A model generated the notes under the pieces. The model was not told the DNA's origin. It saw only the letters and a program-made list of their open reading frames with translations, and ran no database searches. From Malacoraja senta (taxonomy: Eukaryota): a stretch of DNA of 64,000 bases. Below are positions 1,609 to 53,496 of the stretch, in pieces. Every line of letters begins with the position of its first letter. Position 1 is the stretch's first letter. The DNA is taken from positions 62,868,001-62,932,000 of the forward strand of contig CM075982.1 in NCBI GenBank assembly GCA_038087875.1, written 5' to 3'. The position numbers were made by a program, and so were the translations under genes.

Positions 1609-1808
1609 NNNNNNNNNNNNNNNNNNNNNNNNNNNNNNNNNNNNNNNNNNNNNNNNNNNNNNNNNNNNNNNNNNNNNNNNNNNNNNNNNNNNNNNNNNNN
1701 NNNNNNNNNNNNNNNNNNNNNNNNNNNNNNNNNNNNNNNNNNNNNNNNNNNNNNNNNNNNNNNNNNNNNNNNNNNNNNNNNNNNNNNNNNNNNNNNNNNN
1801 NNNNNNNN
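1609..1808. other. Assembly gap (200 N)
   Basis: Run of exactly 200 N, probably a fixed-size scaffolding gap. Confidence 0.99.
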
Positions 1809-8882: not shown

Positions 8883-8975
8883 TGGTGTCAAATAACTTAC
8901 CTTGCGCCTCCCGTTTATCGGTTTATCATTTAATTTTGACCCAGTTTTTTGGTTTCCCCCCCTAACTGTTTTGTT

Positions 8976-11900
8976 ATGGCCTCTTCTGCCCGTAAGCCCG
9001 ATGCGCTCGTTTTCGATTTCGACATCGCCCTTCGATGGGACATATTCAAACGCGACTTTGAACACTATTTCACGATTGCCCATCCTGGCGCCACCGACGC
9101 TCTCAAAGCCTCGCTGCTTCTCAACTTGGCTGGTCCCAACGCCTTGACTCGCTCGGACTTCTTCGTCTACGCTCCTGGAGAATCAGCTCGGGACCCGGCA
9201 TGTCTGTTGGCTAAGTTTGACGCTATTTGTGACATTCCTACTAATTGCATTTTAGAACGTTTTAAACTGTTCGCGCGGCGTCAGCTCCCTGGGGAATCGG
9301 CTGAGAACTATGTCATTGCGCTGCGGGACCTGGGCAGGCGCTGCCGCCTCGAGACGTGGACCCCCGATAATGTCATCAGGGACCTACTGGTTTACGGTCT
9401 CCGTGATGAGAAGCTCAGGTCCGAACTACTTCGCAAGCCGGATCTGACCTTGGCCGATGCAATGCACGCTACTCGCTTAGCCGACGCTGTTTCCGCGGCG
9501 GCGCCGCCGGCTGAACAGGCGATCAACTTTGCCAGCACTCCTAGCTATCCCATGAACGCACCCCAGTCGCGACCCCCGGTGTCGCTCGCTGCTCGAGGGG
9601 GACGCGCCCCGAGGTTCGGTGGTGCCACAAGGGGAGACACCCAGCAAAGGTGCCCTAATTGCAACTTCACATCTCATCAGTTCAATGTGTGCCCTGCGCT
9701 GGGAAAGTACTGCAACTCCTGTAATAAGTTGAACCATTTTGCTGCAGCCTGTCGTTCCCGTGGGAAGCCTGTCGCTGCTCGAAGGCAAAATTTAAACAAC
9801 CTTCTACAGTCGGATAATGATCTCAGCTCCCAGCACTATTCCGATGAACATTCTGTTCCTACATCCAACTCCTCTCAGGCAGAAACCAGCTTGTTTACCG
9901 TGGTGAACGCACCTGCTATGATAACGGATCCTTCTGTGCAAGTCACTGTGAACAACTCGACCTTCACGGCCAAAATCGACACTGGGGCGGTTACCAATGT
10001 TATGTCAACATCTCTTTTCAACCAGATAAGGACTAATGAGAAGATATTTTCTCAGAGCTCAAACCTGCATGCCTACGGTGGGGAGATCCTTACTCCTGTG
10101 GGCAAGGCCACACTACACTGTAAGATACTGAAGGCCACTCGGCCCCTCACCTTCTTTCTCCTCAATCGAAGTTGCGTTCCCCTGCTGGGGATCCAGGCAT
10201 GCCAGGAAATGGGACTGGTGTCCTTCCACCGGGACATCCACCACGTGCGGGCTCTTATGGACCCGCTGGCCGAGTATCCTGACCGCTTTGATGATAAGCT
10301 AGGCAAACTACCCTGCAGCTACAAGATTGAAGTGGACCATAAGATCGTTCCTGTGGTCCATGCTCCTCACCGTATTTCCTTCGCCATGAGGGACAAAGTG
10401 GAGGCGACCCTACACAGTATGGTACAAATGGGCGTCCTAAAGGCGGTCGTCGAGCCCACCAGCTGGGTCTCTTCCATGGTTGTTGCTGCTAAAAAGGACA
10501 TGAGTGAGATACGCATCTGCATCAACCCCAGAGACCTCAACCTGGCCATTCGGCGCCCTCACTACCCTATGAGAACGGTGGAAGACGTCGCTGCACGGGT
10601 TGGTCCAGCAACGGTCTTTTCGGTCCTCGATGCCAAGAGTTCATTCTGGCAGATACCACTGGACGAGCGGTCGTCCATTTTGACAACCTTCGCCACCCCC
10701 TACGGGAGGTTTCGGTTCCTCCGAATGCCCTTCGGAATCAACTCTGCCAGCGAGGTATTCCAGCGAACCATGGAACAGTTGTTTTCAGATCTGCCTTGCG
10801 CCATAATTGTTGACGACATCCTCGTTTACGGTAAGGATGTTGCCGAACACGATGTCAACCTCCGCCTGATCCTGGACCGGGCCAGGCAAATCAACTTGAA
10901 ACTGAACCCCAAGAAGTGCCGATTCCGCGTCTCGGAGGTCACCTATGTTGGACACGTATTCACCGCTGAGGGGCTGAAGCCTGACCCGCAGAAAACGACT
11001 GCCATCTCAGGGATGCCTCCTACTAACGTGGCAGGCCTGCAACGCTTTCTCGGCTTGGTAAACTACCTGGGGAAGTTCATCCCCGACCTAAGCGAGCTCA
11101 GCGCTCCCCTGAGGGATCTGATCAAAAAGGACACTTCCTGGCTTTGGTTACCCAATCATCAGAAGGCATTTGACATTCTTAAGTCTAAACTGATCAGCAC
11201 ACCCACGCTCAAGTTCTTTGACCTGCGGCATCCCATTGTCCTCACCTGCGACGCCTCTCAATTCGGACTCGGTGCCGCCTGCCTCCAGGTCCATGACGGC
11301 CTGCAGATGCCTGTCTCATTCGCGTCCCGCACCATGACCGCCACCGAACAGCACTACGCGCAGATTGAGAAGGAGCTACTGGCCGTGCTGTTTGCCTGCT
11401 CCAAATTCCGGGACTACATCGTGGGCAACACTTTCACCGTTGAAACTGACCATCAACCACTTGTTACCATCCTCAACAAACCGATCCATGTGGCCTCATC
11501 ACGTCTGCAGCGCATGCTGCTGCAGCTCCAGCGTTTCACGTTCACGGTGGTTTATCGTAAGGGGAAGGACATGTTCGTAGCCGACACGTTGTCTCGCGCC
11601 CCGCTGACGTCCACTGCTCGCCACCAATACGAAACGTCCGAGTTACTAGTACTACGATTGAACTTCGTCCCCTCGCCACAGATGAAATCCCTGGTTGAAC
11701 ACACTACTAACGACCCTGCCCTGCAACAGCTGTCTGCCGTCATCCGGCAGGGCTGGCCTGACTGTCGCTCGGCACTGCCGGCTGGAGCCGTGCCCTACTT
11801 CCTGATTCGGGACGAGCTCGTATTGCACGACGGCGTGGCGGTGAAGGGTCACAAAGTGGTCGTGCCCGCGGCACTGCACGACCACTATTTTCAGGTCGCA

Positions 11901-13155
11901 CACCGCGGTCACACTGGGGCCGAAGCCACTTTGTCTCTCGCCAAGGCACAGTTCTATTGGCCGGATATGGCAAAGTACATCCGGGAGAGGGTCTCATCGT
12001 GTTCCACCTGCAACAGCCGCGCCCCCCATCAGCAGCGTCAGCCGCTTCTACAGCAGCCCGCGCCCGGACTGCCCTGGATGGCGCTCGCCACAGACATTTT
12101 CGAGTGGCGGGGCAAACATTTCCTGGTACTCGTTGACTTCTACTCCAGCTGGTTTGCGGTTGACCGGCTGCCTTCCGTGACCTCTTCGGCCGTCATCGAC
12201 AGGTTGGACCCTCACTTTAGCACATTTGGCCCCCCCGGCAAGCCTGCAGTCGGACAATGGCAGCCAGTTCACGAGCTCCGAGTTTAAAGCGTTCGCTTCC
12301 AGATGGAACTTTCGCCATTTCACAAGCAGCCCGGAGTACCCGCAAAGCAACGGTTTGGCCGAGCGCGCGGTCCGCAGTGCTAAGCACCTGTTGGAACAGT
12401 GTGGTGGCATTAACTCCGACTTCCACCTGGCCCTCCTCAGCCTTCGGAACATCTCTCGCGACCCTGCCATGGGTTCACCTGCTCAGCGGCTCCTGTCTCG
12501 CGCTACCAGGCTCCCACTCCCGGTGGCCCAGCGATCCCTCATACCCTCGGTCCTTCCACCTGCGGCGATTCAGAAACGGATTGCCTTCAGGCAAGACGTC
12601 CAAAAGCGGTCCCATGACAGGTCCTGCCACCCGCTGCCGCCCCTCTTCCCCGGTCAAGTAGTCCGTATGCAGACCACTCCCGGTCACTCCAAGCTCGCTA
12701 CTGTCGTCGGCTCTGCGGGGTCGCCCAGGTCCTATTTCGTCGACTACGCTGGGACCATTTACCGACGGTCTCGCCAGCACCTTCGGCTCGTCCACGAGCC
12801 GCGTCCTCCTCCCGCCGATCCCTTTGCTCCCCCGCTGCCTGTTTCCCGTCCGGCCGTTGCCCTGCCCGTGATTCCCTGCATGCCTCGCTCTGCTCCTCCT
12901 TCGCCCCCTCCGCTCCAACACACTCCGACTAGTCCTCGCACGCCTCCCCGCGCTCTCCCCGGTCCCGGCCCCGCATCCCCTCCGGTTTCGGTGCCTCGAT
13001 CTTTTCCGTTTCCTCCCGTTTCTCCCTTTCAGGTTCGTCTGTCCCCGCTGGTGCCTCTTCCTCCTCCAGGAAGGGTGGATGGCGAGACGCGAACCCGGGC
13101 GGGACGTCTGGTCAAACCGCCTGACCGCTATGGCGATGTTGCCTATCTATCCTAG
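8976..13155 (+). CDS. Gypsy gag-pol polyprotein (gag zinc knuckles, protease, RT, RNase H, integrase); single +1 frameshift at C7 run 12230-12236
   Basis: ATG at 8976. Two CCHC knuckles (CPNCNFTSHQFNVC, CNSCNKLNHFAAAC), protease IDTGA, RT LDAKSSFWQIPL/MPFG/IVDD, RNase H CDASQFGLGA, integrase HHCC and D..D(SDNG)..E(AERAV). The two ORFs join if one C is removed (FGPPASLQSDNG). Confidence 0.93.
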
Positions 13156-47689: not shown

Positions 47690-47797
47690 ATGTACCAGCT
47701 TCCTGTTAACAACCTTGCAAATCTAAGAAAAGCTCGTAAAACTGTGAAAAAAATCCTTACTGATATTGGGTTAGATTATTGTAAAGACCATATCGAG
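47690..47797 (+). CDS. ADNP: Activity-dependent neuroprotector homeobox protein, first coding exon (exon starts 47685)
   Basis: acag|AAACT ATG gives [36 protein letters not shown]|gtaagt; human is [36 protein letters not shown]. Not in the ORF track. Confidence 0.96.
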
Positions 47798-49150
47798 GTA
47801 AGTAGAATGTATTTTGGGAGGGGTTGAAATTATATCACATCCTAATTGTACCAGGATTTTGTTAGCATTTCAAAATGAACATAGCAAGTTAAGGCAATTA
47901 TTACATTTATTACATGATGGTCCAGAATTTGCTGTTCTTAAGTTGTAGAAATTGCTACGGTATGGAGATGTTATTCTGATGTGATAAAAGGATGCTCTTC
48001 TGGATGACAAATTATTACAGAGCTTTACTAAATTTATTCCATAACGCCACGAGTGCTGGTTGGATCTGGATATGTAGGGTCAAATTTCAAATATTTTCTA
48101 ATAATGCAGAACTTGAAATGATGGTAAACAGTGAAGAAGAATGTAGGAGATTGCAAGAAGACAGGGTGGCACAATGTGGAATTTCGCAGGCACATGGAAG
48201 TGGCAGATGGAATTTAATACAATTACATAAAGTAATTGGCAGAAAGAATGAGACAGTGTAGATCAAATGGCAGTGTTCTTGATGTATTGTTATGCATTGA
48301 TGGAGTGGTGAGTAAAGTTTATGGCAAAGAATGTAAACGCAGGAAAACTGCATAAGATCCCCACAAGTTGTATGAGGACAGGGTATAAGTTATTTGTTTG
48401 GCCACAACAAGAGGATTGTATCCAATTCTGGCCACTACTGTTAAGAGAGGTGTAGATCCAAGACTTATATAAATTTTTAAAAAAAAGATTCCAGGCTGAT
48501 GTTAGACTTAAAGTTTGGATTACTCTTTTCAGAGCATAGGCGGTTGAGAAGAAGATTGAAGATATATAAGACCATGACTGTTTTAATATGAAAAGTAGAG
48601 TGAACTGTACTTAGAAGCAATGCTTCAAAGACAAGGTGGCACAAATTTCAAATTTGGATAGCATATATAGGGGAATAAAAGTAATCCTGCATAAAATATT
48701 GTTGGGTTGCAAAAAAAATTATTAATTTGTAGAAATGTAACCTCAGCTGAATAAGTGTATATTTATAACCTGGAACAGTGACCGTAAGAGCCCTGGAAAA
48801 GATTACACAAGGCTTTAAAAAGGGAGTTGGAATTGCACTCTAGGGACAAAAATTTGCCAGGGAATGAGTGATAATCCTGCTTTACTATAAGATGCATTGT
48901 CATTTGTCTGGCCACTCCTGCTGTGACAGCAGTTGAATGCTTTGGCATTGAATTTGCAACTATTGGACAAATTACTACTGAAGTAATACTGCATTTTGAG
49001 AACTGAAGTTTGTATCATTTTGCTGCTTACAGTTTTATAGGATTGATTTATATTGTGTGTATAGAAATTGTAAGAAAATTGTTTTGACAAAGCTTCAGAA
49101 AAGGTTTTTAAGAACTAATGAATTCAATAGTAGAATTACTCTTATTCCAG

Positions 49151-49243
49151 GATTTTAAACAGTTTGAACCAAATGATTTCTACCTAAAAAACACTACTTG
49201 GGATGATGTCTCGCTTTGGGATCCTTCTTCCACAAAGCTGCAG
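49151..49243 (+). CDS. ADNP: ADNP second coding exon (93 nt)
   Basis: ttccag|[31 protein letters not shown]|gttggt; phase 0/0. Confidence 0.96.
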
Positions 49244-49806
49244 GTTGGTTTCATTTCAGATTTTGAATATATTGACGGTTAAGTTATGGTTACAGCCATA
49301 ACTAGTTAACAGGAAGATCTTTATCTAGTTATCAGGAAGATCTTTATTACTACAGGATCCTTCATTCTTTTGGTCTGCAATTTTTTAACTAATGGTTCGA
49401 TGATTGTGTTGGTAAATCCACTGTACTGGCAGTTCAAGACATTTGATGCGTCTCTCTGTATATGTGAATTGTAGTTTAATGCAGTTTAAATATGTTGTAT
49501 ATATTTATTCAGTTGTCTCAAGCCTGACTGCTAACTGGAGTATCAGCACAACTTGTAAAGTAGTATCTACTATTCTTGTGTAGACACTAAAAATATATCA
49601 TGGCTAAATAACGGATAACCGATTTAGAGCAGTTTTTGGTAGTGAATTTTAAAATGAAACTTCTAAAATTGAAAAAATATTGTGTATCTATATTTACGCA
49701 AATTATTTACAGTATTCTAATAGTTTTGTTTAAATCATAAATGAAGTAATATTAGATTGATTTACATTGCAATATGAACTAAACATCATTTTTTGTTTTT
49801 TTTCAG

Positions 49807-52800
49807 GATTATCGTACAAAACCATTTTGCTGCAGCGCTTGCCCTTTTGCATCCAAATTTTTTTCTGCCTACAAAAGCCACTTCCGAAATGTTCATAGTG
49901 AAGATTTTGAAAACAAAATCCTCATTAATTGCCCTTATTGTCCATACAATGCTGACAGAAAGACCCTGGAGACCCATATCAAAATATTTCATGTTCCTCT
50001 CTGGAAAGTACCTAGTGGAGGCAAGAATGCACACCATGAAAAGTCAAAGCAGGATAGCAGTCTTAAACTGAAGCATGGTGACAGTGTGGAACAAGCAGTC
50101 TATTACTGCAAGAAGTGTACTTACCGTGATCCCCTTTATGATGTTGTCAGAAAGCATATTTACAGGGAACATTTTCAGCATGTGGCAGCCCCTTATGTGG
50201 CAAGAACAGCAGACAAGTCAGTGAATGGAACATTTTCTGCCACTAATGGAAGAGAGGATGGGACTGTGCATTGTAAACGTTGTCTCTTCATACCCAAAAC
50301 TTACGAAGCCTTGGTGCAGCATGTTATTGAAGACCATGAACGAATAGGATACCAAGTAACAGCTATGATAGGGCATACTAATGTGGTTGTTCCAAGATCA
50401 AAACCCTTGATGCTGATAGCACCAAAGCCACATGACAAGGCTTTAGCTGCTGGAAATTATCAGGGTGGGAAAGGTTCAATGCAGCAGAATATGAATCGTG
50501 CATCCATGTCAAAAAATACACAGAATTCGGCTGTCAATCTTATGTCGGGTGGTGGTCGTCTGCCACCAAAGTATGCTGTTTCATCGATGGCACATAACTA
50601 TTCTTTGGGTCAACAAATGAGGCTCCCACTGCCAGGTGGTTTACCAGTTTCTATGCAGCAGCGACCACAAACAGTAAAACAGTTGATCTCTGGTGGCAAT
50701 GGGCGACAATATGGAGTTGGTGCCGGTGAACAGAGGAGAGCATCGCAGATGCAATATAATGTTCAGTCAGGAAGCATGACTGGTAACAGTGGATCAAGTC
50801 AATTATCAATGAAACAGTCACAGTTCAATATTTCTCAAGCTCAGAGGATGCAAGGATTATCTGCTTCAGCAGTAAAGTCATTAACTTCCCCAACAGGCCT
50901 AACTAATTCTGCTAACCAGAGCCCTGCGTTAGCAGGGTCTGCTGCTCAGAAGTGGAAGATTTGCACAATGTGTAATGAGCTTTTTCCAGAAAGTGTGTAC
51001 AGCATACACTTTGAAAAGGAGCATAAAGCTGAAAAGATCCAGGCTGTAGCTAATTACATTCAGAAGATCAACAGTTTCACAAGCAAATGTCTCTACTGTA
51101 ATCGCTATTTACCCAGTGAAACACTGCTTAACCATATGCTTATCCATGGACTCTCGTGTCCCTACTGTCGTTCCACTTTCAATGATGTTGAAAAGATGGC
51201 TGAACATGTAAGAATCCTTCATATTGATGAAGAAGTGGGACCCAAGACTGAATCAACGTTAACTTTTGATCTGTCTACACAGAAAGGTAGTCGCAGTAAT
51301 ATACAGCTCCATGTTACTACATACAGTACATCTGAGAGTACCTCGGTGGAGAATACAAATTATCGGCCCCAGAATCAGAACTTGGGTTTTAGAAAGCCAG
51401 AAGGGCAGTTGCAGCAGCCAAAACCACAGGTCAAATCTAAAATAAAGCCAGATTTGAATTCTATACCTCAAACCCAGATACCCTATAAAAATGATGTGGG
51501 CAAAACCCTTTGTCCGTTGTGCTTTTCTATTTTGAAGGGCCCAATATCTGATGCTTTGGCGCACCATCTGAGGGAACGGCATCAGGTGATACAAACAATT
51601 CATCCGGTGGAGAAAAAGCTTACCTATAAGTGCATTCACTGTTTGGGAGTCTACACGAGTAACATGACAGCTTCAACCATAACATTGCATCTGGTGCACT
51701 GTAGAGGTGTTGGAAAAACACAAAATGGTCAGGATCGGAGCCTTACTCATGCCAAGGTAACACACTCGCCAAGTGTAATGCCCATGAAGCGAGAATATGA
51801 GTATGCATATGGGGACTTTGCTTTAATGAAAAAAAGGAAATTGGATGGTGAAGAACCTGTTCAGGGTTTAACCCCGGGAGACGATAAACCAGAGGAGCCA
51901 GTAGCTTTAGCTATTGATCCCAAGGGCTATGAGGATGAGTCCTATGAGGCCAGAAAAATGTTCCTTACAAACTATTTTAACAAACAACCTTACCCAAGCA
52001 GAAGGGAAATTGAAAAGTTGGCAGCTGGCTTATGGTTGTGGAAATCTGATATTGCCTCCCACTTTAGCAATAAGAGGAAGAAATGTGTTCGAGATTGCGA
52101 GAAGTACAGGCCTAAAGTATTGCTTGGATTTAACATGATGGAGACGCGAAAAGTAAAGCACAATATGGACTTTGGGCCGACTTGGAATATACTAAATAAC
52201 AAAGAAATAGTTGGCAAAGAATCTGTTACTTTAAAACCAAGCATAGAAAAAGTAAATCAGAAACTGGGAAAAGGGAGAAGAGATTTGATTCGGGGACCAG
52301 AAAAATTGGAGGGAACTGTTTTAGATTTGAGCTCCCAAATGGAGGAAAATTCAAATCCAAACTTGGGAAAGATGAAAGGAAGAACTGTGAACCTGTGTTC
52401 AGAAAACGTGGAGGGAAGTGCTTTAGACTTGAGCACTCAGGTGGAAGAAAGACCTTCAAATGCCGGCTCTGCAATGGAGGAGGGAACACCATTGGATTTG
52501 AGTGCTCAGGTGGTGGAGGAAAGTCCTTCAATCAAGAGCACTGAGATGGTGGAGGAAAGTCCTTCAAATATGAGTTCTGAGATGGCAACAGAGAGCCCAT
52601 CAAATGTAAGTTCTGATATGGTGGAGGGAAGTGCTTTAGATTTGAGTTCCCAGATGGTGGAAAAAAGCCCTTCAAGCATGAGTGCTGAGATGGTGGAGGA
52701 AAGCCCATCTAACATGAGCGCTGAGATGGTGGAAGCAAGTCCTATAAATACGAGTCCTGATAATATGGAGGAAAATGCAACAAATGCTTTTGTTGGTGAA

Positions 52801-53496
52801 GATTTGTCATCAAGTGAAATGAGTGGTTTGCAGAGCAGGGAAGAAACTTCTGAAATGGTTCCTGAAGAATTAAACAAGGAATTGCAAAAACCTGCATTTA
52901 CGGCAACTGCATCATTAGAGTTGAAGGATGATGTGTCAAATATGGACGAGGAGCAGTATCCTGCGCCATCTTTAGAATCAAAAGATAAAGACTCAGAAAG
53001 TGAAGATTCAGAACAACTTTCTGAATGCAAAGATGTTGCTTCACCAACTGAGGATGGACTAGCATCGCCACATGCTTCTGATCAGGAAGATGTTTCATCT
53101 GAACTTAAGCAAGAATTTTGGATCAAACGACCTTGGACAGATGATGTATCCCAAAGTGAAGAGGAGGAGGAGCCCACTCGGACCTCGAAAACAAAAGCTG
53201 TATTGGAAAATGATGAACAAAATTGGGGAGCGGGGCCAGGTGAGTGGAGTGGAGCACCATTCCAAAATGAAGGAGAAAAGTGGTCCAAAGAACAGCCTGA
53301 ATGGAAGAATGTTTCACCAGAAAATGAGGAGAGTTTGTCCAATCCATTGTTGGATTGGCAAGGTAACACGGCAGATAGTGAAGGTGAGGAGCTGGATCAA
53401 CTCCTTGATCAGTCAAACGATGGCCTCTCCGATAATGTAGCAGAACCTGTTTGCAGCTCTTCATCGGGTGTTGGGCTAAGTAGTCAACCTGCATAA
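49807..53496 (+). CDS. ADNP: ADNP large terminal coding exon (zinc fingers, NLS, homeodomain, PxVxL, acidic tail); total protein 1296 aa
   Basis: tttcag|[30 protein letters not shown]..., in frame with ORF 50086-53496 (whose GTG start is not real). Multiple C2H2/C2HC fingers, KKRK, homeodomain [40 protein letters not shown]1-binding PKVLL (52111-52125). Ends GVGLSSQPA* (human GVKLSSQQA). Confidence 0.97.
52306..52776 (+). repeat. Coding minisatellite in ADNP, ~13 units of 33-36 bp (11-12 aa)
   Basis: Units such as [12 protein letters not shown] / [12 protein letters not shown] / [12 protein letters not shown]; DNA consensus ATGGTGGAGGAAAGYCCWTCAAAYATGAGTKCTGAG. Confidence 0.9.

What the first reader, a model, noticed from the sequence alone, without database searches (positions are those of the whole stretch)
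52306..52776. ADNP has a tandem-repeat expansion carrying four CtBP-type PxDLS motifs interleaved with SP phospho-repeats
Seen: downstream of the homeodomain/PxVxL are ~13 units of 11-12 aa of two types, EG(S/T)xLDLSxQ(M/V) and [11 protein letters not shown]. They give VLDLS (52318-52332), ALDLS (52420-52434), PLDLS (52489-52503) and ALDLS (52633-52647). The array accounts for much of the extra length (1296 aa versus ~1100 aa in human). LDLS is kept despite synonymous codon differences (TTA/TTG, GAT/GAC, AGC/AGT). Knowledge: PLDLS is the canonical CtBP-binding motif, ALDLS and VLDLS are functional variants (EBV EBNA3A), CtBP is oligomeric so multivalency raises avidity, and ADNP forms the TE-silencing ChAHP complex with CHD4 and HP1. 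I recall no such array in mammalian ADNP. Inference: this lineage may have a ChAHP-CtBP variant with a phospho-tunable multivalent corepressor tether created by minisatellite expansion.
Basis: partly seen in the sequence, partly recalled or inferred. Interest (0 to 1): 0.8.

Follow-up and report, generated by a model that had tools for sequence, protein, structure and literature searches.

The report
Skate ADNP carries conserved CtBP-type motifs
The disordered tail of the chromatin regulator ADNP in skates, rays and sharks holds four strictly conserved docking-type motifs for the corepressor CtBP, set in an old 12-residue repeat array; this suggests, but does not prove, a CtBP link that mammalian ADNP lacks.

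Summary
Window 49801-53496 (+) is the last exon of ADNP from a skate. At the stated coordinates it encodes VLDLS, ALDLS, PLDLS and ALDLS within about 13 units of 11-12 residues of two homologous types.

- **Age of the array.** It is not a recent or lineage-specific minisatellite. All four motifs sit at the same positions in 22 skates, rays and sharks. Chimaeras keep only motif 2. Tetrapods, coelacanth, lungfish, gar, bowfin, bichir, sturgeon and skate ADNP2 have none.
- **Selection.** In five elasmobranchs the LDLS codons collect synonymous changes at the background rate (pS 0.39) but almost no replacements (pN/pS 0.026). The rest of the array has pN/pS 0.36 (Fisher p=0.008). The SP cores are equally constrained.
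- **Disorder.** AlphaFold2 predicts the region to be disordered.
- **Precedent.** ALDLS and VLDLS are experimentally shown CtBP sites in EBNA3A and RAI2. In RAI2, two ALDLS motifs 21 residues apart polymerise CtBP; here motifs 2 and 3 are 18 residues apart.
- **Second gain.** Neoteleost adnpb carries a canonical PLDLS in a different sequence context.
- **Modelling.** A complex prediction gave weak support only (0.52; best control 0.01).

Binding and phospho-regulation remain untested. I found no prior description.

The parts
47690..47797 (+). ADNP coding exon (residues 1-36 of the 1289-aa orthologue model)
   Evidence: tblastn of Leucoraja ADNP P0088, 100% identity
49145..49243 (+). ADNP coding exon (residues about 35-67)
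   Evidence: tblastn of P0088, 94% identity
49801..53496 (+). Last, large ADNP exon with zinc fingers, homeodomain, HP1 motif, repeat array, acidic tail and stop. The 5' boundary is approximate.
   Evidence: tblastn residues 66-1289, 98%; Pfam ADNP_N 1.9e-293; the same frame is open for 1237 aa
51958..52083 (+). Homeodomain (ORF residues 625-666)
   Evidence: Pfam PF00046, 8.8e-07; 0.016 changes per column across 22 elasmobranchs
52111..52125 (+). PKVLL, the PxVxL-type HP1 chromoshadow-binding motif of ADNP
   Evidence: Read. Aligns with PGVLL of tetrapod ADNP. HP1 dependence of this motif in mouse ADNP and ADNP2 is shown in bioRxiv 10.1101/2024.02.05.578923.
52306..52776 (+). Repeat array of about 13 units of 11-12 aa, of two homologous types: EG(S/T)xLDLSxQ(M/V)V and [12 protein letters not shown]
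   Evidence: AF2 mean pLDDT 49 with no secondary structure
52318..52332 (+). Motif 1, VLDLS (V or I at the first position across elasmobranchs)
   Evidence: LDLS in 22 of 22 species
52420..52434 (+). Motif 2, ALDLS (the only one also present in chimaeras)
   Evidence: ALDLS in 22 of 22 elasmobranchs and 2 of 2 holocephalans
52489..52503 (+). Motif 3, PLDLS (canonical PxDLS), 18 residues after motif 2
   Evidence: PLDLS in 20 of 22 species, PLDLR in Rhincodon and Stegostoma
52633..52647 (+). Motif 4, ALDLS (A in batoids, Pristiophorus and Heptranchias; V in the other sharks)
   Evidence: LDLS in 22 of 22 species
52480..52767 (+). Higher-order duplication: two 144-nt blocks, each of one LDLS unit plus three SP units
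   Evidence: TRF period 144, 2.0 copies, 76% matches; units listed in register
52516..52623 (+). Three SP-type units ([36 protein letters not shown])
   Evidence: SP columns 0.071 changes per column; SP codons 7 synonymous to 0 replacement changes
52660..52767 (+). Three SP-type units ([36 protein letters not shown])

Best explanation
The post-homeodomain tail of elasmobranch ADNP is an intrinsically disordered region. It was built by an ancient tandem duplication of a 12-residue unit. In four units the SP-type core (P-S-N-M-S) is replaced by x-L-D-L-S, which creates four short linear motifs of the CtBP-binding (PxDLS) class.

Most likely each LDL core docks as a beta-strand in the PxDLS cleft of a CtBP subunit. 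One ADNP molecule could then engage several subunits of a CtBP dimer or tetramer. ADNP is already tied to CHD4 and to HP1 through PKVLL in the ChAHP complex, so this would add a CtBP corepressor module at ADNP-bound sites.

Shown here: the motifs exist, the region is predicted disordered, the motifs are under strong purifying selection, CtBP genes are present in the genome, and identical pentapeptides bind CtBP in other proteins.

Inferred: that binding occurs in ADNP, that it is multivalent, that its outcome is repression, and that the interleaved conserved SP sites are phosphorylated and modulate it.
For: 1. Protein-level conservation. Across 22 elasmobranch ADNPs the 16 LDLS columns show 1 change in total (0.062 per column). 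The rest of the array shows 1.24 per column and the homeodomain 0.016. Block-permutation p is about 5e-4.
2. Codon-level conservation in 5 elasmobranchs. LDLS codons have pS 0.39, pN 0.010 and pN/pS 0.026 (7 synonymous to 1 replacement change). The rest of the array has pN/pS 0.36 (43 to 71), Fisher p=0.008. The zinc fingers plus homeodomain have 0.076.
3. The first motif position varies only among V/I, A, P and A/V. P, A and V are documented at this position of CtBP sites.
4. ALDLS and VLDLS of EBNA3A bind CtBP and synergise (PMC2883600). Each ALDLS of RAI2 binds CtBP with a Kd of about 5 uM through the central LDL only (PMC11187106).
5. AlphaFold2 with an alignment gives mean pLDDT 49, pTM 0.10 and no secondary structure, so the motifs should be accessible.
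6. The genome encodes two CtBP paralogues. Their exons match residues 3-352 of a vertebrate CtBP1 core, which includes the N-terminal part of the PxDLS-binding domain.
7. Independent recurrence. Neoteleost adnpb has PLDLS or PLNLS directly before EPIAIDSDSDEEE. Among the 75 clusters that carry this anchor, 51 have PLDLS and 3 have PLNLS; 6 more clusters without the anchor also have PLDLS, out of 93 clusters in all. The sequence context is unrelated to the shark array.
8. Complex prediction of a vertebrate CtBP1 core with the 41-residue piece holding ALDLS and PLDLS: ipSAE 0.52 against a best control of 0.01. Runs agree in at least 54% of contacts and the partner pLDDT is 40-43. The tool's verdict is 'weak support'. 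Its mark was reached by 51 of 78 solved complexes and 2 of 108 mismatched pairs. Scores of 0.60 or under came from only 5 of those 78, and from all 4 mismatches that passed.
Against: - No binding experiment exists for any ADNP, and I found no paper linking ADNP to a PxDLS motif.
- Three of the four motifs have A or V rather than P or G at the first position. As I recall the strict ELM pattern, they fail it.
- Mammalian ChAHP works without such motifs, and chimaeras keep only one, so the module is dispensable for core ADNP function.
- The complex prediction is only a weak pass. It may reflect the model's memory of solved CtBP-peptide complexes, and it used a surrogate vertebrate CtBP1 rather than the skate protein.
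- The SP cores are just as conserved as the LDLS cores. The whole array may therefore serve a partner that is not CtBP.
Confidence: 0.5

Rival explanations
1. The motifs bind CtBP, but the array acts like RAI2. Closely spaced motifs would cross-link CtBP tetramers into filaments or nuclear foci. This would sequester or inactivate CtBP, or concentrate it into condensates on ADNP-bound chromatin, rather than simply tethering an active corepressor.
For: In RAI2, two ALDLS motifs separated by 21 residues polymerise CtBP and relieve CtBP repression, and a 10-residue linker still works (PMC11187106). In skate ADNP, motif 2 (ALDLS) and motif 3 (PLDLS) are separated by 18 residues. This spacing is the same to within a residue in all 22 elasmobranchs. 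The other linkers are 29 and 43 residues.
Against: Other proteins with multiple PxDLS motifs are reported as ordinary CtBP recruiters; EBNA3A is one, and ZEB1/2 by my own knowledge. Polymerisation has been shown only for RAI2. ADNP is DNA- and HP1-bound, which favours local recruitment. Nothing was tested here.
Confidence: 0.15
2. The array is a conserved disordered module for a different partner or property, and the match to CtBP motifs is coincidental. Candidates are SUMO binding (V/I-L-D-L followed by Ser and acidic residues resembles a SUMO-interaction motif), an S/T-Q cluster for ATM/ATR-type kinases (LDLS-S/T-Q occurs three times), or an acidic phospho-regulated spacer.
For: Motif 1 (V/ILDL), and motif 4 in many sharks (VLDL), fit the hydrophobic-hydrophobic-x-hydrophobic core of SUMO-interaction motifs. 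Three of the four motifs are followed by SQ or TQ. The SP cores are as conserved as LDLS, so selection is not specific to the CtBP-like part. Teleost ADNP has a clear SIM-like IAIDSDSDEEE nearby.
Against: Motifs 2 and 3 have invariant A and P at the first position, which fits CtBP sites but is poor for a SUMO-interaction core. The invariant element is L-D-L-S in all four, exactly the CtBP core. The independent teleost motif is the canonical PLDLS. The SQ/TQ reading does not explain why LDL is invariant.
Confidence: 0.2
3. The array is a neutral relic of an old repeat expansion. It looks conserved only because cartilaginous fishes evolve slowly.
For: Elasmobranch substitution rates are low: the tree length is 0.82 substitutions per site for the whole exon over 22 species. 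Much of the ADNP tail is conserved.
Against: Synonymous divergence at LDLS codons (pS 0.39) equals the background (0.30-0.34), while replacements are about 12 times rarer than in neighbouring array codons. Neighbouring columns changed 1.2 times each on the same tree.
Confidence: 0.05

Closest known systems
RAI2 (retinoic acid-induced 2), tandem ALDLS motifs binding CtBP
   Same: It has the same non-canonical pentapeptide ALDLS, present more than once in a disordered region. The linker is short (21 residues in RAI2, 18 between ADNP motifs 2 and 3). Contact in RAI2 is through the central LDL only (PMC11187106).
   Different: RAI2 has two motifs and no DNA-binding domain, and it inactivates CtBP by polymerisation. 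ADNP has four motifs, interleaved SP units, zinc fingers, a homeodomain and an HP1 motif. No sequence homology to RAI2 was detected or expected, and polymerisation was not tested.
EBV EBNA3A (ALDLS plus VLDLS) and EBNA3C (PLDLS)
   Same: The same three pentapeptides occur here. The two non-canonical EBNA3A sites synergise for efficient CtBP binding (PMC2883600).
   Different: These are viral proteins with two sites and no repeat array. The relation is convergence, not homology.
Mammalian ADNP in the ChAHP complex (ADNP-CHD4-HP1)
   Same: The skate gene is the orthologue: ADNP_N zinc fingers, homeodomain and a PxVxL-type HP1 motif (PKVLL here, PGVLL in tetrapods).
   Different: Mammalian, bird, reptile, amphibian, coelacanth and lungfish ADNP have no xLDLS motif and no 12-residue array in the tail. 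No CtBP appears in the ChAHP/ChAHP2 paper that I searched.
Neoteleost adnpb (medaka, cichlids, flatfishes, cod and others)
   Same: It is the same gene family and the same region (the disordered tail after the homeodomain), with a canonical PLDLS or PLNLS.
   Different: It has a single motif, fused to a SIM-like acidic stretch (EPIAIDSDSDEEE) and not in a repeat array. The motif is absent from salmonids and pikes (PQYLS or PKYLS), otophysans, elopomorphs, osteoglossomorphs, gar, bowfin, sturgeon and bichir, so it is an independent gain.
Zinc-finger/homeodomain repressors with several PxDLS-type motifs (ZEB1/ZEB2, Drosophila Knirps, Kruppel and Snail); from my own knowledge, not tested here
   Same: They are DNA-binding factors that carry two or three CtBP motifs in disordered linkers.
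   Different: Their motifs are not embedded in a tandem repeat. These are different protein families.

Membership tests
ADNP (activity-dependent neuroprotector homeobox) | ADNP_N zinc-finger region plus C-terminal homeodomain | tested here: met
   Pfam PF19627 1.9e-293 and PF00046 8.8e-07; 98-99% identity to skate ADNP models
ADNP (activity-dependent neuroprotector homeobox) | PxVxL HP1-binding motif just after the homeodomain | tested here: met
   PKVLL at 52111-52125, aligned with PGVLL of tetrapods. The paralogue ADNP2 lies elsewhere (G000:C19), has PFVLL and no tail.
CtBP-binding PxDLS short linear motif | Pentapeptide P/G-[LVIPME]-[DENS]-[LM]-[VASTRG] (ELM pattern as I recall it) | tested here: inconclusive
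   Motif 3 (PLDLS) meets the pattern. Motifs 1, 2 and 4 (VLDLS, ALDLS) fail it at the first position but are identical to experimentally validated non-canonical sites in EBNA3A and RAI2.
CtBP-binding PxDLS short linear motif | Located in an accessible, disordered region | tested here: met
   AF2 with a 12-sequence alignment: mean pLDDT 49, pTM 0.10, no secondary structure
CtBP-binding PxDLS short linear motif | Motif conserved above the flanking disordered background | tested here: met
   0.062 against 1.24 changes per column, permutation p about 5e-4; pN/pS 0.026 against 0.36, Fisher p=0.008
CtBP-binding PxDLS short linear motif | Partner present in the same organism | tested here: met
   Two CtBP paralogues in G000 (C1 and C2934), with exons matching residues 3-352 of a vertebrate CtBP1 core. 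Shared nuclear location is assumed from knowledge of both proteins.
CtBP-binding PxDLS short linear motif | Physical binding to the CtBP cleft that depends on the D-L residues | not testable with these tools
   Only an in-silico proxy was possible: ipSAE 0.52 against a best control of 0.01, 'weak support', no interface reported
RAI2-type CtBP polymeriser | Two or more CtBP motifs separated by a short linker (10-21 residues work in RAI2) | tested here: met
   The linker between motifs 2 and 3 is 18 residues; the others are 29 and 43. Spacing is conserved.
RAI2-type CtBP polymeriser | Induces CtBP filaments or nuclear foci | not testable with these tools
   Needs SEC, EM or cell imaging
Minisatellite (recent, unstable coding tandem repeat) | High identity between units and copy-number differences between related species | tested here: not met
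   Units are 70-76% alike. Unit number and motif positions are the same in 22 elasmobranchs apart from one SP unit missing in batoids. All skate transcripts keep four motifs.
SUMO-interaction motif | Core of three or four aliphatic residues (V/I/L) flanked by acidic or phosphorylatable residues | tested here: inconclusive
   Motif 1 (V/I-L-D-L), and motif 4 in some sharks (V-L-D-L), fit. Motifs 2 and 3 have invariant A and P and so have only two aliphatic residues.

The most novel reading that the evidence does not exclude
ADNP acquired CtBP docking at least twice in fish evolution: a four-motif array in elasmobranchs and a single PLDLS in neoteleost adnpb. In elasmobranchs the array, with its RAI2-like 18-residue spacing and conserved interleaved SP sites, would nucleate phospho-regulated higher-order CtBP assemblies on ChAHP-bound chromatin. 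That would be a ChAHP-CtBP super-complex with no mammalian counterpart.
Probability: 0.15. Interest if true: 0.7.

Novelty: new member of a known kind. Interest (0 to 1): 0.45.

Why it matters
ADNP is the sequence-specific subunit of ChAHP, which silences retrotransposons and competes with CTCF, and it is a major autism gene. All mechanistic work has been done in mammals, where the tail after the HP1 motif is regarded as poorly conserved.

If the elasmobranch array and the neoteleost PLDLS really bind CtBP, the composition of ChAHP differs between vertebrate classes. A second corepressor system (CtBP with its associated histone-modifying partners) would then be wired to ADNP in sharks, rays and most spiny-rayed fishes. 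Medaka, a laboratory species with the motif, would allow a direct genetic test.

The case also illustrates how a repeat unit (P-S-N-M-S) can turn into a docking motif (x-L-D-L-S) through a few single-base changes and then be frozen by selection.

If the motifs do not bind CtBP, this remains a well-conserved repeat in a disordered tail, of modest interest.

Tried and rejected
- **Ortholog DNA.** No DNA was returned for Scyliorhinus canicula, S. torazame, Hypanus or Mobula because the assembly files were too large. No record was found for the Rhincodon X2, Heterodontus or Narcine proteins. The codon analysis therefore rests on five elasmobranchs plus Callorhinchus, not on the 22 species used at protein level.
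- **Solved structures.** A PDB sequence search with the whole exon product and with the 41-residue two-motif piece at E up to 10 gave no hit.
- **Recent minisatellite.** Rejected.
- **Array shared with ADNP2.** Rejected. Skate ADNP2 ends about 30 residues after its PFVLL motif and has no xLDLS.
- **Homology between the teleost PLDLS and the shark motifs.** Rejected. The flanks are unrelated, and the teleost motif occupies the place of PQYLS or PKYLS in salmonids and pikes and of non-motif sequence in gar, bowfin and elopomorphs.
- **RRT-type second CtBP motif.** Absent from skate ADNP.
- **Literature.** Papers that mention both ADNP and CtBP do so only as separate entries in interactome lists; I checked the TBR1 interactome paper. 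None of the top hits combines ADNP with PxDLS or PLDLS.
- **Complex prediction.** Reported as weak support only. The tool gave no interface, so I cannot say which of the two motifs docked.
- **CtBP used in the model.** It was an unnamed vertebrate CtBP1 representative (P0239, residues 1-352), because a full-length skate CtBP could not be assembled from exons under the tools' rules.
- **Cyclostome ADNP.** Not found in the first search and not pursued. Whether the common ancestor of jawed vertebrates had a motif therefore stays open.
Full report
**What is there.** The window comes from a skate. It is contig C6 of a 1.94-Gb assembly, and its ADNP is 98-99% identical to that of Leucoraja and Amblyraja. 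ADNP has coding exons at 47690-47797, 49145-49243 and about 49801-53496 on the plus strand. The large exon matches Pfam ADNP_N (1.9e-293) and the homeodomain. It carries the PxVxL-type HP1 motif PKVLL at 52111-52125.

The synonymous differences between copies are as described: TTA/TTG, GAT/GAC and AGC/AGT.

**Anatomy of the array.**
- Tandem Repeats Finder reports a 36-nt period (6.8 copies, 70% matches) and a 144-nt higher-order period (2.0 copies, 76%) over 52474-52762.
- In register, 52480-52767 is two blocks, each of one LDLS unit ([24 protein letters not shown]) followed by three SP units such as [12 protein letters not shown].
- The two unit types are homologous codon for codon. They differ by a coordinated set of single-base changes: GGA/GAA, GCT/CCT, TTA/TCA, GAT/AAT, TTG/ATG and CAG/GAG. 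An SP unit (P-S-N-M-S) is therefore only a few point mutations from a CtBP-type core.
- The 5' third of the array (52306-52479) holds motifs 1 and 2 among more degenerate units.
- Linkers between motifs are 29, 18 and 43 residues. The array has 7 SP dipeptides and 3 S/T-Q sites.
- AlphaFold2 with a 12-species alignment gives mean pLDDT 49, pTM 0.10 and no secondary structure, consistent with intrinsic disorder.

**Distribution.**
- One database search plus a cluster look-up gave ADNP from 22 elasmobranchs (skates, electric ray, sawfish, stingrays, mantas, sawshark, cow shark, catsharks, carpet sharks, lamnids, bullhead shark) and 2 holocephalans.
- All 22 elasmobranchs have four motifs at the same positions. 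The only departure in the LDLS core is PLDLR in Rhincodon and Stegostoma.
- The first motif position is V/I, A, P and A/V at motifs 1 to 4 respectively.
- Batoids lack one SP unit that sharks and chimaeras have. Otherwise the unit number is fixed.
- Chimaeras keep only motif 2 and lack about 47 residues around motif 3.
- No xLDLS occurs in tetrapod, coelacanth, lungfish, sturgeon, bichir, gar or bowfin ADNP. None occurs in the skate's own ADNP2, which ends about 30 residues after its PFVLL motif.
- All assembled skate transcripts retain the array. They are spliced contigs of about 5.4 kb, shorter than the genomic span.
- The array is thus an ancient duplication shared by all living sharks and rays, not a recent or unstable minisatellite.

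**Selection.** On a tree of the 22 proteins, parsimony gives these changes per column:

| Region | Changes per column |
|---|---|
| 16 LDLS columns | 0.062 (1 change in total) |
| SP columns | 0.071 |
| Other 127 array columns | 1.24 |
| Homeodomain | 0.016 |

Four random 4-column blocks do as well as the LDLS columns in about 5 of 10,000 draws.

DNA was obtainable for Pristis, Heptranchias, Chiloscyllium punctatum, Stegostoma and Callorhinchus. Among the five elasmobranchs the codon classes compare as follows:

| Codon class | pS | pN | pN/pS | Synonymous : replacement changes |
|---|---|---|---|---|
| LDLS | 0.39 | 0.010 | 0.026 | 7 : 1 |
| SP | 0.36 | 0.000 | 0.000 | 7 : 0 |
| Rest of array | 0.34 | 0.122 | 0.36 | 43 : 71 |
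| Zinc fingers plus homeodomain | 0.34 | 0.026 | 0.076 | 337 : 81 |

Fisher's exact test for LDLS against the rest of the array gives p=0.008. The motif cores are as constrained as the folded DNA-binding domains.

**Why CtBP is the leading candidate.**
- PLDLS is the canonical CtBP site.
- ALDLS and VLDLS are the two non-canonical sites of EBNA3A, which synergise for CtBP binding (PMC2883600).
- RAI2 has two ALDLS motifs 21 residues apart. Each binds with a Kd of about 5 uM through the central LDL alone, pairing with beta-strand 2 of the CtBP binding domain (PMC11187106). That fits an invariant L-D-L-S with a tolerant first position.
- The skate genome has two CtBP paralogues.
- A complex prediction was run with a vertebrate CtBP1 core (P0239, residues 1-352) and the 41-residue piece holding motifs 2 and 3. 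It scored ipSAE 0.52 against a best control of 0.01. Runs agreed in at least 54% of contacts and the partner pLDDT was 40-43.
- The tool grades this as weak support. Its mark was reached by 51 of 78 solved complexes and 2 of 108 mismatched pairs. Scores of 0.60 or below came from only 5 of the 78, and from all 4 mismatches that passed. Memory of solved CtBP-peptide complexes cannot be excluded.

**An independent line of evidence.** A second search showed that neoteleost adnpb carries PLDLS directly before a SIM-like acidic stretch, EPIAIDSDSDEEE. Among the 75 cluster representatives with that anchor, 51 have PLDLS and 3 have PLNLS; 6 more without the anchor also have PLDLS, out of 93 representatives in all. 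Carriers include Lampris, Polymixia, medaka, cichlids and flatfishes, with PLNLS in cod and Lepidogalaxias. Salmonids, pike and mudminnow have PQYLS or PKYLS at that place, syngnathids have lost the motif, and earlier-branching fishes have none. The context is unrelated to the shark array. ADNP therefore appears to have gained a CtBP-type motif in its tail at least twice.

**Mechanism and rivals.**
- My best reading (0.5) is a multivalent CtBP-docking module added to ChAHP in elasmobranchs.
- A variant (0.15) is RAI2-like cross-linking of CtBP tetramers. The conserved 18-residue spacing of motifs 2 and 3 suggests it. The outcome would be sequestration or condensate formation rather than simple tethering.
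- A different partner, such as SUMO or kinases acting on S/T-Q, is possible (0.2), because the SP cores are equally conserved and motif 1 resembles a SUMO-interaction core. The invariant A and P at motifs 2 and 3 and the canonical teleost motif argue for CtBP.
- A neutral relic is disfavoured (0.05).
- Phosphorylation of the SP sites, and any tuning by it, is pure inference.

**Comparison and novelty.** The closest known cases are RAI2 and EBNA3A (same pentapeptides, multivalency) and zinc-finger repressors with several PxDLS sites. The gene itself is ordinary ADNP. I found no paper that links ADNP to a PxDLS motif. Papers that mention both ADNP and CtBP list them separately, and the ChAHP/ChAHP2 study I searched does not mention CtBP. 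I class the finding as a new member of a known kind: a CtBP-motif-bearing transcription factor. If true, it implies that ChAHP composition differs between vertebrate classes.

**Limits.** There is no experimental binding. The codon analysis covers five species. The CtBP in the model was a surrogate, not the skate protein. Polarity (gain in chondrichthyans or loss in bony vertebrates) is unresolved because no cyclostome ADNP was retrieved.

Noticed in passing
P0085 and P0128-P0214 (teleost adnpb), about residues 925-950: Neoteleost adnpb has a canonical PLDLS (PLNLS in cod and Lepidogalaxias) fused to a SIM-like acidic stretch, EPIAIDSDSDEEE. The acidic stretch is present in nearly all teleosts, including adnpa. 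The PLDLS is absent in salmonids and pikes (PQYLS or PKYLS), lost in syngnathids, and absent in zebrafish relatives.
   Followed up: partly
P0090 (Rhinoraja longicauda ADNP), HP1 motif: This skate has PKALL instead of PKVLL at the PxVxL HP1-binding motif, that is, the central valine is replaced. This could be a real variant or an assembly or annotation error.
   Followed up: no
P0032 (Ambystoma mexicanum ADNP), tail after the homeodomain: The axolotl tail has its own unrelated SP-rich repeats (NVSSPKQNVSSPKEDGSSPK...) at the equivalent place. The ADNP tail seems prone to independent repeat expansions.
   Followed up: no
L014 (G000:C19:7813500-7819900, minus strand): Skate ADNP2 is a 920-codon open frame that ends about 30 residues after its PFVLL motif. 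It has no disordered tail and no CtBP-type motif.
   Followed up: yes
L016 (Callorhinchus) and P0005; alignments: Chimaeras keep only ALDLS (motif 2). At the places of motifs 3 and 4 they have SP-type or near-motif units (SPLRMS, EGSPSCLSP) and lack about 47 residues. Whether this is loss in chimaeras or gain in elasmobranchs is open.
   Followed up: partly
window 8949-13155 (+): Two overlapping open frames encode a Ty3/gypsy-like retrotransposon pol (reverse transcriptase, RNase H, integrase zinc-binding and core domains), with a frame change near 12226-12287. They lie about 35 kb upstream of ADNP.
   Followed up: no
window 1609-1808: A run of 200 N (assembly gap or masked stretch). Left as it is.
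   Followed up: no
L001-L005 (G000:C19:7.94-8.26 Mb and C5723): Five hits to the 2-hydroxyacid dehydrogenase family, with open frames of about 190-270 aa, are clustered within 0.3 Mb on the same contig as ADNP2. They are not CtBP and were not identified further.
   Followed up: no
P0101 (skate transcript assembly): One skate transcript has FLDLS instead of VLDLS at motif 1. The other three motifs are unchanged.
   Followed up: no
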